Below, piece after piece: positions 33,601 through 39,298 of a DNA stretch of 64,000 bases. The translations under genes and the position numbers were made by a program. The number at the start of each line of letters is the position of its first letter. The first letter of the stretch is position 1. Location of the stretch: contig BDGG01000002.1 of assembly GCA_001949185.1 (NCBI GenBank), forward strand, positions 2,539,826 through 2,603,825, written 5' to 3'. Origin of the DNA: Ramazzottius varieornatus (Eukaryota; Animalia; Tardigrada). A model generated the notes under the pieces. The model made no database searches. It was given only the letters and a program-made list of their open reading frames with translations, and had not been told where the DNA came from.

Positions 33601-36176
33601 GAATACTCTGTGGCAGCTGGAAGAAACGCTGATGGAACGGAAGGAAATCTCCCGCACTGCTAACCGATCGGAAAGCCAGAGCGGCTTACAGAGCGCCGTC
33701 CATCTTGATTGAATTGCTGAGATATATAGTCTGAGCCCACTACCGATCAGAACTGGTCAAAAGCAGACCTCCCGAACATTGGCATATTTGAATTGCCGAT
33801 ACATGACGCTTTTCGCCACCGACTGATCGAATGTCTTGATGAGCAGAGCTTAACCTTTTTTGACGCCACGTTGTAAGTCTAAATGGGATACATTCAATTC
33901 TCAGCGCGACAACCACGGAAAACGCTAAACGAGAGGACGAAAGCTCCACCGCCAACTTACCCCTGAACCAGGAGTGAACTCCGTTCGGTTCAGGGCTTGT
34001 TGAAATTATTATGTGGCAATGTCCTTTGCATGGCGAGCCAACCAGCGTAGGTTTTCCGGACAACACAAAGGTACGCCAAAACGCAATCTGCACAGGCTTA
34101 CGTGCCATATTAGAGGATACTCAAGAAGCTGTCTGGACGGGACTGTTTCTGATCTGCGACACCGAATCTTCTTCTAGATCCGTCCGCGTAACGAATTCTG
34201 ACTGTTCGGTCTTTGTCTCATTCGGCTGTCATCTTTTTAGCTTACAGAGAGACCAGACGAAAGCGCACGTGAGCGTAACACGCTTGGAAACCTGTTCGGA
34301 CACAAAATCGATGTGATCATTGATTCACCATCGCAAAAGCAGTCGTATCTTCACGACCGCTGCTCTAGCGAACCTACAACCTGCAGTTTCATGTAACTTT
34401 TGAATGCTCTAGACATTAGCATCAGCCGTTGGAGCATTCTTTACCTGTACACTTCGGAGATATGGATGTCGGATCATCCTACAGTTACAGTATTCAGGTA
34501 TTCGTTACATTGTTGACGACGATTGATCTAGATTATGTCGTCATTCATCTAGAAACACCGCCTGTTGCAGGAGTGTTGATGTTGCTTCCGCTTAAAATGC
34601 GGAAATCCTCGTTAGCTTCTGGTGATGACGTTCCCGCCAAAGCCAATCGTAAACCTAAGACCGATCTGCTTCGAGTGTAAAGCATCGAGCTGCGTTCCTT
34701 TGCATAATGCATACTGTTATACTTCATGAAGACATGAACTTCGCGAAGCACGTCATGATACGCTCGCAGCTGCAAGTATACACATTGACCTGGTTCACAT
34801 GGAGCTTTGATTGTCATCAGGTGGCAGCACTAGGAGCATCCAGCAGCGGTACTTCGCCCGGGTACTTCACTGCTTTCACCGCCAGTAAAGGTCTGAGTGC
34901 TAAAAGGCTTAACGGTTTGGTCTGCAACAGGTAGTTTTCGTGCTTCGATAAGAACACTGGCCAAACGGATTGAGAGTCATAAGGTTTTGTTAGAGCAGAA
35001 TTCTGCTAAAAGGTCAAATGCCTGAAGGGCATGTTGATCTAGGGCCGTTTTGTCAACAAAGGAGACCGAGCTTCCGCACACGAGCCTGGTCTAAATNNNN
35101 NNNNNNNNNNNNNNNNNNNNNNNNNNNNNNNNNNNNNNNNNNNNNNCACATTTAGGCCAGGCGCGTGTACCCAAAGGCACTTTGACCGTGCACCATGATG
35201 GGTCACATCGTCGACTGCGATGGAGATGCTGCTACTGCTGAGCTGCTCATCTTGGCATTAATCATTTTTGCGGATGACTTCTGACAGACGGTCGTCGGAT
35301 GTCAAAACAACAGTATTCTTGCTTCGAACTTTGTCCCTAATCATGTATTCAACTCGCCTTGGCTCACAAACTTCTCTTTTCTGTACCTGGTACGGTAATT
35401 TCCCAGCTTGCTCGCAATTTTTTTTCTTATTCCGGCGCCATCAGGTCCGTTGGTAGTATTTCGTATTCAACGTTCATCCGTGCGTATTCAACATGGCTCG
35501 TGCCCTGATCATGATCCTGATCGTTCTCCTTGGAATAACCGGCATCGTCAGTGGCGCTGGTTACAGCAGCACTGGTAGCAGCGGTAGCGGTGGCAGTTGC
35601 TCAACAAGAAAATATCGCGCGGAAGGCATTGTTGTGGGTACCGCCGCTTTACTTGACCAACCGAGCTCACTTTCGAACTGCCATTTTTATAAGGGATCGG
35701 TTGTTGAGTTTGCCGCCTCATAATTCAGTTGCTGGGTAAGTTACCCATTTCCGCCTGTTTGTCTGACTGATTCAAAATGCTCTCGCATGACCCGCTGGAC
35801 AAACAACTGGCTGCCGACGGTACCATTTACATTCGAAATGACCAGAAGATCCGAAAATGCTTAAAACAAAAAGCGTCCGGATCCCATGTTAAATATTTGA
35901 ACCCTAAACCAACTGACCGATCAAGCGATACAAGCCATACTGGTGGCTAACTCAACAACACTTCCTTGTACTTTTGCCTTTCTCATCTAGGATGATCCGT
36001 ACCTGACTGAGGCCGACGCTAATGGGAGGGTTCAGTGGGTTCATCATCGACGTACTGGAAGCCATGAAGAGCGCGTCGGGAGGGTGGTTTGACTACAGAC
36101 TGACGCAGCATCCGGAAAACTCTTACGGTAATTCCGTCAATGGAACCAATTCCGGACTTATCGCGGACCTCGTTAA

Positions 36177-36706
36177 CACCTTGAACACGGGGCGGGAAAC
36201 TCACTTTCCCGGCGCACACTCATTTGTGCGCAGCGAGTTTCCAGTTTATCTTTTGCTCCCCGGTTTTTTCCTTTTGCCCGAACAACTAACCCTTCTTGAA
36301 ACTAAAACTAGCGGCTACTGGACACTTGCTCTGCAAACCTGGGAGGAGTTTTTTTCCTTTCTTAACGGGATTTCGGCGTAGCCAGCAAATTACTTTCCAG
36401 CCAGGCTCTCAGTTAGTCCAGTGTCACCAAAATAGTTGTTGCGCGAGCGCAAACATTTTAGTATCGTGCGGCAGTTTCAGATTATTGGAAAGATCTGCCC
36501 AGTGGTCATTGAAAAAACCTTGAAGCCTGGCCTTTTGAGTTGGCAGGTGGCGCACTCTGCATCATATTCCAAAATTTTGGCCAATCGATGAGGTAGTGAT
36601 TGGTCTAATTTGGTACCGCCCTCAAGTTTTAACCAGTTAATACAAGGCGAAAGTTACTTTCCCGCATCGTATTCTGAAAGTACGAAATCGCGCAGTGCTC
36701 AAGGTG
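36177..36706. mobile_element. piggyBac-like non-autonomous element (530 bp)
   Basis: TTAA on both sides (36173-36176 and 36707-36710); TIR CACCTTGAACAC / GTGCTCAAGGTG; removal restores the host exon end and donor. Confidence 0.85.
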
Positions 36707-36719
36707 TTAACAACGTGAG

Positions 36720-36875
36720 CTGAGTACACGCATGATGGGAAATTATAGGACAGGCGGAAACGACAGCATAATGGAGATTTGACCATGGAAAAAGAGTCGA
36801 AAAGCGCATTACTGTGAATCAGTCGCGTCCGTACGTGCTTCCGTACCGTGTACCGGAAAGGTCTGTCCCAGAATT
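36720..36875 (+). mobile_element. TA-type MITE family T1, partial copy
   Basis: GGACAGGCGGAAA...ATTACTGTGAATC...CTTCCGTACCG core shared with the other T1 copies. Confidence 0.65.
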
Positions 36876-38451
36876 TGCCATCGTGAGTTGAGTAGTGTAT
36901 TGTTTCCTCAGATTCGCCTCCCTTTCCAAAAGTGACCCAGTTGGAGAAAAAAAGCAGGGTGGCTACATAACTACGAGGACATAAATCGGGCATAGCGATT
37001 TTCGCACCATAATTCGAGCAACGCTAAAAGTTTAAGCTTTATTCTTAGCTCTTCATCGAATTCTTATCGTACGCCTGTCGATACAACTTCAGGCTTTTTA
37101 CATTGGGCAGACCCGTCTCTCCCTCACGACTGCTCTGACTTCTAACGATTCTTCTGACCTACAGCATTTCATCGTTCCCAAACCTGTTTGGACCTTGAGG
37201 AGAGAGATTGACTTACCTCTGGAAACAGTAAGCACGTGATCAGCTATACAGCAGGAGCTCAGAAAAATTATGCTTGAATTATGATGCGAAAATCGCTGTG
37301 CCCGATCTACGTTCTCTACCTCGTGAGGCTTTTTCTATTTCACCATGATAGAGTAGACTCCTGGCCAGGCGCGTCCCACAGGCAAATTTTCACGACGAAA
37401 CTTTGCCAAATGAAAAGTATTCCAACTTTGGACTTGACGACTCGAGTCGTGAGGTCGGGCTAGAAGTTCGAATACTTTTTCATTGGGCAACTTTTTGCCG
37501 TAAGAATACAGTACATTCCCTAAGTCACCCGGGCGGGTTCTGCTGTACCGCCGAAAGTTTGGTTTACTCATTGGATGTTCTTCTTCCTGTTTTAGAAGAC
37601 TGACATCACTGCAGCAGAGTTGACTGTCAAAAAGTCTCGCCAAGCGGTCATCGACTTTCTGCAGCCGTTTCTGCGTAGCGGTATTCGGATTGCCGTCAAT
37701 AATGCCAACGGGGTTCTCGGAACTTACCCTACGTTCGATGTCACCAACTTTCCCAGCATTACCGGCTTCCTCTCGGTATCATCATCTTTCCCGCTTACGG
37801 TAACCGTCTCACCAGGGCTCACTCATTTGATGTGCACTTTCAGAGCAGCAAGGATCCTGTGTATAAAGCTGCTTTCGAGAGCGCGAAATCGGCAAACCGT
37901 CTGGTGACCGATGAAGCCGGGATAGCCGCCCTTCTTGCAAGCAGTTCACCGGCAGCACTTATACGCCCACTTTGGCCCGACTGGTTGACCAGAACCCTGG
38001 TAGAATCAGCCTGACAAGTACCATTTATACAGCTGCCTTTTTCGCCTTTGGAATCCAGCAAAGCAAGTCTGTACTTTTGAATATTTAGGTCAGAAGTGCG
38101 ACAAAATGGCTGACAGGTTTTTTCTCCCCGTAGATCAAAACGACATCCGGCTGTGTTTGAACTCATTGCTCCTGACCACCCAAGAAAGCGGCGAACTACA
38201 AGAGCTGTTGAACAAATACAGTTTGAACTCATAGTTTCTGAAATCTCGTGTCTTGTATCATCATGACTTAGTAGGGTAGACCGCCCGTAAAAGCGCAAAT
38301 CGACGTCCGAAGTCAGAGTTCCCGTGGTGGCGCCACCTGCCCGTTGTGAGTTCGAATGACAAGGCGCCAGACAGAAAGCGGCTTCTGTTGAGCCAAAACC
38401 TTCGTGGAATTGCCGTATGCCACTTTCGACGTACAGAAGTTCAGCTTACAG

Positions 38452-38841
38452 TATAGGCGACCTTAGTACAGCAATACAAAAGCTCTAGAACCCCGGTTGC
38501 ATCGATTGTAGCCGTATCAGTCTGTCAAACTAGTGTTGTACGACGGCGTACGTTTCTGTGCTGACAAGCACAGCACGCAGATAGCGTTGCCAACATTTAG
38601 GCAAGTTGCACTGAGAGAAGATGTCGGAAGAGCTTGCCAGAGTGCTGTGTGAGTCAGCACATTGCGGCAGTATGGAAAGCTCTTCCGGGCACCAGTCCAA
38701 ACACTGCGAGCATGTATCAGTCAGAGCGATCAAACGATCACATACGAAGCCTTGTACGTCACCCAACACAGGCAGCAAGGGTGCTGGAACCTTACGTTGT
38801 ACATGGCGAATTAAGCACGCAGCCTAAAAGATCGGCCTATA
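38452..38841 (+). mobile_element. hAT-type MITE, family H1 diverged copy (390 bp)
   Basis: TATAGGC...GCCTATA ends; 8-bp TSD GCTTACAG; internal sequence similar to 8617-8998. Confidence 0.85.
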
Positions 38842-38916
38842 GCTTACAGTGCTTAACTTGACGGGCCTACCGTACAGCCGACCCGTGTACAGCATCGCTT
38901 GGGCTTTTGCCTTCCG

Positions 38917-39298
38917 TATAGCCGGTTTCATTAGGCTGACTTTCTGACTGGCTGTTCAGAACGTGACGTATCAGCACGCCTGACGCCTGTGTAGGGTGAT
39001 GTACAAGGCCTCGTATGTGATCGTTTGATCGCTCTGACTGGTACATGCTCGCAGTGTTTGGACTGGTGCCCGGAAGAGCTTTCCATACTGCCGCAATGTG
39101 CTGACTCACACAGCACTCTGGCAAGCTCTTCCGGGATCATCTCTTCGTGCCACTTGCCTAAGTTGTTGGCAACGTTGTCTGTGCACTGTGCTTGCTGGAC
39201 AGAAACGTACGCCGTCGTACAACACTCGTTTGATACTGACCCCGTACATGCAATCGCGGCGGGCACGGCGGCGTTTTGAATTATTAAAAGTGGCTATA
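38917..39298 (-). mobile_element. hAT-type MITE, family H1 copy 3 (382 bp)
   Basis: TATAGCC...GGCTATA ends; TSD GCCTTCCG/GCCTTCTG; reverse complement of 8617-8998 with few differences. Confidence 0.85.

What the first reader, a model, noticed from the sequence alone, without database searches (positions are those of the whole stretch)
35493..38234. A secreted, channel-less glutamate-receptor ligand-binding domain (natural S1S2 protein)
Seen: signal peptide, Ser/Gly linker, then iGluR S1 (DPYL..FSGFIIDVL..YG..G..GLIADLV..DI..AELTV..SRQAVIDFLQPFL.SGIRI). Within one exon S1 runs straight into S2 (SITGFLSSSKDPVYK..EAGIAAL..AALI..FAFGIQ..IR..LN..LL..QESGELQELLNKY*). There is no ATD, no M1-pore-M3 and no M4. 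Known: in iGluRs/IRs, S1 and S2 are split by the channel. The Thr and Arg equivalent to GluA2 T480/R485 (amino-acid backbone contacts) are kept here. Inference: the gene encoded a soluble amino-acid carrier, buffer or decoy, analogous to molluscan AChBP for Cys-loop receptors. Two Cys (SCST, RLCLN) might staple the termini. This copy is damaged (two frameshifts and a TE), so function would lie in intact paralogs.
Basis: partly seen in the sequence, partly recalled or inferred. Interest (0 to 1): 0.85.

Follow-up and report, generated by a model that had tools for sequence, protein, structure and literature searches.

The report
Dead copy of secreted channel-less glutamate-receptor domain
This tardigrade (Ramazzottius varieornatus) locus is a broken copy of a small, real and expressed gene family that encodes only the ligand-binding clamshell of a glutamate-receptor channel, with a signal peptide and no channel: a natural version of the engineered "S1S2" proteins, of unknown function.

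Summary
Window 35493-38234 (+) is a five-exon gene: signal peptide, Gly/Ser linker, then iGluR-type S1 running straight into S2, with no ATD and no membrane segments. This copy is a pseudogene. It has a 1-nt insertion in exon 2, a 1-nt deletion in exon 4, and a 530-bp TTAA-flanked MITE that sits inside exon 2, not in an intron.

The genome is Ramazzottius varieornatus and holds five copies. Two look intact: RvY_06352 (292 aa) and RvY_03759. Three are decayed. RvY_06352 is transcribed and spliced exactly as modelled in RNA assemblies from four studies, with no extra exons.

A family profile aligns end to end with engineered GluK1/GluK2 S1S2 crystal constructs (E 8e-41). Structural matches are led by iGluR LBDs. 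In a tree the family sits with animal iGluRs, away from bacterial binding proteins. It also shares a phase-0 intron with canonical tardigrade iGluR genes. So it arose from an animal iGluR by loss of the channel, not by transfer from bacteria.

Relatives exist in Paramacrobiotus metropolitanus and in metatranscriptomes. These keep the Thr/Arg/acid residues that hold an amino acid; the Ramazzottius copies have lost the acid. Ligand binding and any decoy or carrier role are inference. An earlier scan note (s1-795129) flagged a paralog on other DNA.

The parts
35493..35633 (+). Exon 1: start codon, hydrophobic signal-peptide-like segment, Gly/Ser-rich linker, conserved Cys, first beta-strand. Donor GTGGGT at 35634.
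   Evidence: Homologous to exon 1 of paralogs L012 and L011. The donor position matches L012, whose splice is confirmed by RNA contigs.
35991..36176 (+). Exon 2, main part: N-terminal half of S1. A 1-nt insertion in a G run at about 36028-36030 shifts the frame.
   Evidence: Pfam Lig_chan-Glu_bd positions 28-76. Length comparison with L012 exon 2 and with P0045.
36177..36706 (.). 530-bp MITE inserted inside exon 2. Terminal inverted repeats CACCTTGA(A/G)CAC, with TTAA target-site duplication at 36173-36176 and 36707-36710.
   Evidence: 582 first-look candidates in the genome; the about 40 scored copies are 74-93% identical; six other copies all flanked by TTAA.
36711..36714 (+). Last four bases of the original exon 2, followed by the original donor GTGAGC at 36715.
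   Evidence: Removing the MITE and one TTAA restores ...GTT AAC AAC|GTGAGC (DLVNN), matching DLANN|GTGGGC in L013 and DLVNK|GTAAGC in L011.
36975..37316 (.). Second short TE with 46-nt inverted termini, inside intron 2 (36715-37595).
   Evidence: inverted repeat I2. (79% copies on contigs C4 and C15).
37596..37775 (+). Exon 3: C-terminal half of S1, with Thr at 37623-25 and Arg at 37638-40, then the S1-to-S2 crossover with no membrane segment.
   Evidence: Pfam Lig_chan-Glu_bd positions 79-112 and SBP_bac_3. Alignment A1. Residue equivalence shown by the alignment of relative P0166 to GluK1.
37844..38062 (+). Exon 4: main part of S2. A 1-nt deletion at about 37962 shifts the frame. The donor at 38063 is GC (GCAAGT), where the paralogs have GT.
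   Evidence: Collinear with exon 4 of L012 (6113-6344), which is intact.
38134..38234 (+). Exon 5: the last two helices of S2 with the second conserved Cys (RLCLN), then stop TAG at 38232-34. There is no hydrophobic tail.
   Evidence: Same phase-1 junction as L012 exon 5, which is confirmed by RNA contigs.

Best explanation
The locus is a pseudogenised member of a tardigrade gene family. The family encodes secreted, stand-alone ligand-binding domains of ionotropic glutamate receptors: S1 fused directly to S2, a type-II periplasmic-binding-protein clamshell.

The family descends from an animal AMPA/kainate/delta-like iGluR gene that lost its amino-terminal domain and all channel-coding sequence. 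Shown: Ramazzottius varieornatus has five copies. One (RvY_06352) is intact and expressed, one more (RvY_03759) looks intact, and three, including this one, are decayed.

Inferred mechanism: after signal-peptide cleavage the roughly 230-residue clamshell is released outside the cell and closes on a small ligand. Paramacrobiotus and the metatranscriptome relatives keep the Thr/Arg/acid triad that holds an alpha-amino acid, so an amino acid is the likely ligand there. In Ramazzottius the acid is replaced by Thr or Asn, so the ligand is probably a different carboxylate, or binding is being lost along with the gene copies. The protein would then act as a soluble binder (carrier, buffer or decoy) and not as a channel.

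Confidence is high for identity and origin, and modest for function.
For: - Architecture. See the exon map. PF00060 is absent at all five loci while it is found in the canonical iGluR loci of the same genome. Hydropathy shows only an N-terminal hydrophobic segment in family proteins, against M1/M3/M4-grade peaks in a canonical iGluR.
- Intact paralog. L012 gives a 292-aa GT-AG model identical to database protein P0001, which is GAU94614.1 / RvY_06352. RNA-derived contigs from four studies carry exactly its four splice joints and nothing else; one contig begins with a template-switch oligo.
- Pseudogenes. L011 and L013 carry frameshifts, in-frame stops and deletions. The window copy carries two frameshifts and an exonic MITE.
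- iGluR origin.
  - The profile A2 matches GluK2 and GluK1 S1S2 constructs in one stretch (143 bits, E 8e-41), but matches full-length receptors in two stretches.
  - Bacterial proteins score 48-60 bits against a family HMM built from A3.
  - The structural search with the P0138 model (pLDDT 83) gives its top 13 hits as iGluR LBDs (Z 18.3-20.9), above bacterial binding proteins. Foldseek with the P0001 model likewise returns iGluR LBDs.
  - In the ML tree the family is monophyletic (95/92) and joined to bivalve and nemertean iGluRs by a 100/99 branch that excludes bacterial binding proteins.
  - A phase-0 intron just before the K-x-D-I motif is shared with three canonical R. varieornatus iGluR genes.
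- Relatives. A 251-aa Paramacrobiotus metropolitanus protein named 'glutamate receptor ionotropic, delta-1-like', and roughly 250-aa proteins on roughly 1-kb metatranscriptome contigs.
- Binding residues. The alignment of P0166 to GluK1 shows Thr, Arg and the Glu of 'LIMES/LLMES' conserved. A2 shows D/E at that column in all non-Ramazzottius members, and T or N in P0001 and P0003.
Against: - No binding, secretion or localisation data exist; function is inferred from fold and residues only.
- The Ramazzottius proteins lack the alpha-amino-binding acid, and three of five copies are dead. That is compatible with a family losing its function in this lineage.
- The tree has few named iGluR references, so the exact parent subfamily (kainate versus delta) is not resolved.
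- The P0001 model is only moderately confident (pLDDT 65).
- The taxonomic source of the metatranscriptome relatives is unknown.
Confidence: 0.8

Rival explanations
1. The gene family was acquired from bacteria as an ABC-transporter amino-acid-binding protein (SBP_bac_3) and later gained introns. The iGluR likeness is only the shared ancient fold.
For: Full-length P0001 scores slightly higher on SBP_bac_3 (44.4 bits) than on Lig_chan-Glu_bd (42.2 bits). JGI's automatic names call the relatives ABC-type amino-acid-binding proteins. The only short relatives that the word-indexed search found outside tardigrades are bacterial.
Against: - iGluR LBD constructs score 143 bits, against 48-60 bits for bacterial proteins.
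- In the less diverged relatives, Lig_chan-Glu_bd scores 85-97 bits against 51-69 for SBP_bac_3.
- The tree separates the family plus animal iGluRs from bacteria with 100/99 support.
- The intron position and phase are shared with canonical tardigrade iGluR genes.
- Sequence identity to delta and kainate LBDs in structural alignments is 27-32%, against 13-26% for bacterial proteins.
Confidence: 0.04
2. The locus is part of an ordinary iGluR gene whose channel exons lie elsewhere, were missed, or were lost to mis-assembly. There is then no stand-alone protein.
For: Gene models in this genome are imperfect. For example, the annotated RvY_03759 lacks the signal peptide and the last exon that the DNA shows.
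Against: - RNA contigs of 1.09-1.27 kb from four studies cover the paralog from 5' UTR to 3' UTR, with four joints and no other exons.
- An in-frame stop follows the last LBD helix in the four loci that keep the last exon (the window, L012, L013 and L014); L011 has lost that exon.
- There is no PF00060 hit near any of them.
- Independent 244-263-aa relatives on metatranscriptome contigs, and a 251-aa Paramacrobiotus protein, end at the same point.
Confidence: 0.03
3. The window copy is actually functional. The two frameshifts are assembly errors, and the MITE is removed from the transcript by use of an alternative donor.
For: One frameshift lies in a G run. The frameshifts were not checked against reads here.
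Against: - The MITE interrupts the coding sequence, and the reading frame runs into it to a stop at 36379-81.
- No protein from this locus appeared among database hits, whereas three paralog loci yielded annotated proteins.
- Two other copies show the same kind of decay, with unambiguous in-frame stops and deletions.
Confidence: 0.05
4. The family proteins are secreted but do not act as free ligand binders. They could pair with the LBD layer of membrane iGluRs or IRs as auxiliary or dominant-negative partners, or serve a structural extracellular role through the Gly/Tyr/Asn-rich N-terminal linker.
For: - iGluR LBDs dimerise back to back in receptors (established knowledge).
- The Ramazzottius proteins have lost the alpha-amino-binding acid.
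- They carry a low-complexity G/Y/N/S linker that the other relatives lack.
Against: The Thr/Arg pair is conserved in most copies, and the full triad in non-Ramazzottius members. That argues the pocket has been under selection for ligand binding. No interaction test was run.
Confidence: 0.15

Closest known systems
Engineered iGluR S1S2 ligand-binding cores (e.g. GluK1/GluK2/GluA2 S1S2 crystal constructs)
   Same: Same fold and the same collinear S1-linker-S2 layout. The family profile aligns over positions 25-254 of 258 with chain residues 3-250 in one stretch. Thr/Arg/Glu ligand contacts are conserved in Paramacrobiotus and the metatranscriptome members.
   Different: These are natural genes with a signal peptide. 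The S1-S2 junction is shorter than the engineered one, skipping the first S2 strand and helix that the GluK1 construct keeps. The conserved iGluR S2 disulfide is absent, and most members have no mature-chain Cys at all.
Canonical animal iGluRs of the AMPA/kainate/delta group
   Same: They are the closest relatives by sequence, structure and tree. A phase-0 intron inside S1 is shared with tardigrade iGluR genes.
   Different: No amino-terminal domain, no M1-pore-M3, no M4. The protein cannot form a channel.
Bacterial periplasmic amino-acid-binding proteins (SBP_bac_3; e.g. LAO-, Arg-, Gln-binding proteins) and GluR0 LBD
   Same: Soluble or secreted type-II clamshell of the same size. Structural Z is 16-18 and the Pfam SBP_bac_3 threshold is passed.
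   Different: Lower sequence scores (48-60 bits) and a separate clade. The tardigrade genes have spliceosomal introns and animal iGluR-type S1 motifs, and there is no ABC-transporter context.
Molluscan acetylcholine-binding protein (AChBP)
   Same: Analogy only: a secreted protein consisting of just the ligand-binding domain of a ligand-gated channel family (established knowledge; e.g. PMC3423370, seen).
   Different: Unrelated fold and receptor superfamily. AChBP's decoy function is shown experimentally; nothing is shown here.

Membership tests
Ionotropic glutamate receptor (iGluR/IR) channel subunits | Bipartite S1+S2 ligand-binding domain of iGluR type | tested here: met
   Pfam Lig_chan-Glu_bd on window exons 2 and 3 and above threshold on P0001. 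End-to-end match to S1S2 crystal constructs. iGluR LBDs top the structure search.
Ionotropic glutamate receptor (iGluR/IR) channel subunits | Pore module M1-P-M3 inserted between S1 and S2, and M4 after S2 (Pfam Lig_chan PF00060) | tested here: not met
   No PF00060 hit at any of the five loci. The mRNA of the intact paralog has no such exons. There are no TM-grade hydrophobic segments beyond the signal peptide. It is therefore not a channel subunit.
Type-II periplasmic-binding-protein fold (SBP_bac_3 superfamily) | Two alpha/beta lobes joined by two crossover strands, with the SBP_bac_3 profile matched across both lobes | tested here: met
   SBP_bac_3 at 44-69 bits spans nearly the whole mature chain in P0001 and its relatives. 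The AlphaFold model of P0138 (pLDDT 83) aligns over about 210-235 residues to iGluR LBDs and bacterial binding proteins at Z 16-21.
Bacterial ABC-transporter substrate-binding proteins | Prokaryotic gene linked to an ABC permease/ATPase, and phylogenetic placement among bacterial SBPs | tested here: not met
   The gene has five exons with GT-AG introns in a tardigrade chromosome-scale contig. The tree places the family with animal iGluRs.
Alpha-amino-acid-binding iGluR LBDs | Arg and Thr in S1 (GluA2 R485/T480) plus an acidic residue in S2 (GluA2 E705) that hold the ligand's carboxylate and amino groups | tested here: inconclusive
   Thr and Arg are present in the window copy and in P0001. L014/P0003 and L011 have Ala in place of Thr but keep Arg. 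The acid is present in P0166, P0138, P0065, P0126, P0069, P0045 and P0167, but is replaced by Thr or Asn in the Ramazzottius proteins, and there is no acid at that point in the window copy. Actual binding is not testable with these tools.
Secreted proteins | Cleavable N-terminal signal peptide, with no membrane anchor | tested here: inconclusive
   There is an N-terminal hydrophobic stretch of about 20 residues followed by small residues. The C-terminus has no hydrophobic tail. No dedicated signal-peptide predictor or experiment was available.

The most novel reading that the evidence does not exclude
Tardigrades carry a previously undescribed class of extracellular proteins: free iGluR ligand-binding domains, an evolutionary reversal of the ancient fusion of a binding protein with a channel. 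They would bind amino acids or related small molecules in body fluid or at sensory or neuromuscular sites. There they would act as a natural decoy, buffer or perireceptor carrier for glutamatergic or IR-based chemosensory signalling, the iGluR counterpart of AChBP.
Probability: 0.3. Interest if true: 0.8.

Novelty: new variant of a known kind. Interest (0 to 1): 0.6.

Why it matters
iGluR ligand-binding cores have been studied for about 25 years as artificial S1S2 constructs. A natural, expressed, secreted equivalent shows that the domain is viable and selectable on its own in an animal. It also documents the reverse of the binding-protein-plus-channel fusion that created iGluRs.

If these proteins bind transmitters or nutrients, they would be a new kind of extracellular modulator or carrier. 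They would also be ready-made soluble scaffolds for structural work and biosensors.

The Ramazzottius family, with one expressed, one intact-looking and three dead copies, also gives a snapshot of such a family in decay. The specific window locus is only a pseudogene.

Tried and rejected
- Bacterial origin was considered and rejected.
- A mis-modelled fragment of a canonical iGluR was rejected.
- Word-indexed homolog searches gave little. The profile A2 returned only the two Ramazzottius proteins and bacterial proteins. P0138 returned the Paramacrobiotus protein and one metatranscriptome protein. P0045 returned only itself. These blanks say little about distribution.
- The search for related loci failed on the alignment. 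With P0138 it found only 23%-identical bacterial loci.
- Literature searches for a described soluble iGluR LBD, for the locus tags, or for a tardigrade iGluR study of this family found nothing relevant. That covers the held open-access library only.
- The ESM Atlas look-up gave only generic iGluR and SBP clusters.
Exons were searched one by one by reference. Full-length work used database proteins (P0001 and others) returned by the searches. Repair of the window's frameshifts for a search was therefore left out.
- The Cys-staple idea (Cys in exon 1 with Cys in exon 5) was not tested, because the N-terminal part of the P0001 model is low-confidence.
Full report
**What is in the window.** The region 35493-38234 (+) reads as a five-exon eukaryotic gene.

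- Exon 1 (35493-35633) starts with a hydrophobic signal-like segment, then a Gly/Ser-rich linker, a Cys and a first beta-strand. Its donor (GTGGGT) lies where the intact paralog has GTGAGT.
- Exon 2 (35991-36176 plus 36711-36714) and exon 3 (37596-37775) carry S1. Pfam Lig_chan-Glu_bd matches them on adjacent parts of the profile: positions 28-76 (E 8.5e-5) and 79-112 (E 3.4e-6). SBP_bac_3 is a weaker second hit on exon 3.
- Exon 3 continues past the last S1 strand (…RIAVNN) without any hydrophobic stretch.
- After a 68-bp intron come exon 4 (37844-38062) and exon 5 (38134-38234), which carry S2 and end in a stop.

The one amendment is that the S1-S2 crossover is followed by a short intron and is not within a single exon.

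**Damage in this copy.** I compared it with the intact paralog.

- Exon 2 has one extra G at about 36028-36030.
- Exon 4 lacks one base at about 37962.
It has terminal inverted repeats and a TTAA target-site duplication.
  - The first-look search found 582 candidate copies in the genome, and the roughly 40 scored were 74-93% identical. Six that I inspected are all flanked by TTAA.
  - It lies inside exon 2. Removing it restores …GTT AAC AAC|GTGAGC, the expected exon end and donor. As it stands, the reading frame runs into the MITE and stops.
- A second MITE with 46-nt termini sits in intron 2 at 36975-37316.
- The donor of intron 4 is GC.

The locus is a pseudogene. I did not verify the two indels against raw reads.

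**Organism and paralogs.** The window is contig C2:2539826-2603825 of a 55.8-Mb, 200-contig assembly. Database proteins identical to my models are from Ramazzottius varieornatus. Exon-wise searches of the genome find five copies and no more.

| Copy | Position | State | Evidence |
|---|---|---|---|
| Window copy | C2 about 2.58 Mb | Pseudogene: two frameshifts and an exonic MITE | |
| L012 | C2 about 8.79 Mb | Intact, all GT-AG, 292 aa; identical to P0001 = GAU94614.1 / RvY_06352 | |
| L014 | C2 about 1.05 Mb | Looks intact but more diverged; RvY_03759, whose annotated model misses the signal peptide and last exon | |
| L011 | C2 about 0.96 Mb | Pseudogene: lost acceptor, two frameshifts, truncated exon 4, no exon 5 | |
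| L013 | C13 about 0.25 Mb | Pseudogene: two in-frame stops, a large deletion and a frameshift in exon 4 | |

An earlier first-stage note of this scan (s1-795129) had flagged the L011 locus with the same reading.

**No channel.** PF00060 (Lig_chan) finds the pore module in a number of canonical iGluR loci of this genome, but finds nothing at any of the five loci.

For the intact paralog, assembled RNA contigs of 1.09-1.27 kb from four different studies lie on the gene with four GT..AG joints. These match my exon borders exactly, and there is no other sequence between them. One contig starts with a template-switch oligo, so it is cDNA.

Hydropathy shows only the N-terminal hydrophobic segment in family proteins. 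A canonical iGluR in the same run shows M1, M3 and M4 peaks.

**What it is related to.** A profile of exon 3 was searched against 1.84 billion representative proteins. It returned the Ramazzottius proteins first. It also returned 244-263-aa proteins with the same layout from roughly 1-kb JGI metatranscriptome contigs. A further search found a 251-aa Paramacrobiotus metropolitanus protein named "glutamate receptor ionotropic, delta-1-like".

- **Pfam.** Full-length members pass the Pfam thresholds for both Lig_chan-Glu_bd and SBP_bac_3, and none has Lig_chan.
- **Solved structures, by sequence.** The family profile aligns in a single stretch (positions 25-254 of 258) with engineered GluK2 and GluK1 S1S2 constructs (143 bits, E 8e-41). 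It aligns with full-length receptors in two stretches separated by the channel. All 60 listed hits are animal iGluRs, led by kainate and delta.
- **Bacterial proteins.** They score 48-60 bits against a family HMM built from A3.
- **Structure.** The AlphaFold model of P0138 (pLDDT 83) has iGluR LBDs as its 13 best structural matches (Z 18.3-20.9, up to 32% identity), followed by bacterial binding proteins (Z up to 18.2). The weaker P0001 model (pLDDT 65) also returns iGluR LBDs first.
- **Tree.** An ML tree was built from nine family members, six TM-containing iGluR LBDs and nine bacterial or multi-domain binding domains. The family is monophyletic (95/92). A 100/99 branch joins it to bivalve and nemertean iGluRs and excludes all bacterial sequences. 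Sampling is thin and most iGluR tips are unnamed, so the parent subfamily is not fixed.
- **Shared intron.** The phase-0 intron between exons 2 and 3, immediately before the K-x-D-I…T…R motif, lies at the same position and phase in three canonical R. varieornatus iGluR genes.

Together these results point to origin from an animal iGluR gene by loss of the ATD and channel exons. They argue against bacterial transfer.

**Ligand pocket.** In the alignment of the Paramacrobiotus protein to GluK1, three ligand contacts are conserved: the S1 Thr, the S1 Arg, and the S2 Glu of the "LLMES/LIMES" motif. All non-Ramazzottius members have D or E at that column.

However, P0001 has Thr and P0003 has Asn in place of the acid, and the window copy has no acid at that point. 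The residues that would face the ligand side chain vary among members.

My inference is that the family ancestrally bound alpha-amino acids, with varying side-chain preference. The Ramazzottius branch has changed or is losing that chemistry, which fits three of its five copies being dead.

**How it most likely works.**
- Shown: a transcribed gene encoding a signal-like start followed by an LBD clamshell, with no anchor.
- Inferred: secretion, clamshell closure on a small ligand, and a role as a soluble binder (carrier, buffer or decoy).

Alternatives that I cannot exclude are pairing with receptor LBDs as an auxiliary or dominant-negative partner, and a structural role for the Ramazzottius-specific G/Y/N/S linker. 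The AChBP comparison is an analogy of logic only.

**Novelty.** Databases name these proteins "hypothetical", "solute-binding protein family 3 domain-containing" or "delta-1-like". I found no paper describing a natural channel-less iGluR LBD, and none mentioning the locus tags. The search was limited to the held open-access library.

I rate it a new variant of a known kind. The fold and its parent family are well known. The stand-alone secreted form in an animal appears undescribed.

**Limits.**
- The single read-laying run was used on the intact paralog, so expression of the window copy and the reality of its indels remain untested.
Full-length analyses used proteins returned by the databases.

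Noticed in passing
window 36177-36706, and many loci genome-wide (e.g. L015-L020): An abundant, roughly 520-530-bp MITE family with CACCTTGAGCAC termini and TTAA target-site duplications (piggyBac-like insertion signature). The first-look search found 582 candidates, and the scored copies are 74-93% identical.
   Followed up: partly
window 38525-39233: A foldback-type element just 3' of the gene. It has 245-nt arms (38597-38841 and 38917-39161, 85% complementary) nested within 35-nt outer inverted repeats, and mirrored ORFs on both strands.
   Followed up: no
window about 35070-35125: A run of N (an assembly gap) about 400 bp upstream of the gene's start codon, seen as X runs in the ORF list.
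   Followed up: no
G000:C5:2593066-2593326 and G000:C20:89626-89871: Lig_chan-Glu_bd hits (80.5 bits and 21.4 bits) with no PF00060 hit listed on the same contigs. They could be divergent IR-type genes or further channel-less LBDs.
   Followed up: no
L014 6080-6195 (G000:C2 about 1050080-1050195): The annotated RvY_03759 model keeps a 19-residue insertion by using a roughly 32-nt intron, and misses both the signal-peptide exon and the last exon that the DNA shows. The gene model needs RNA evidence.
   Followed up: partly
Proteins P0034, P0014, P0013, P0035 and others: Several top hits of the exon 3 profile are long proteins with 2-4 tandem contiguous SBP/LBD-like domains. The ESM Atlas also lists a giant-virus (Nucleocytoviricota) cluster of SBP_bac_3 / Lig_chan-Glu_bd proteins.
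   Followed up: no
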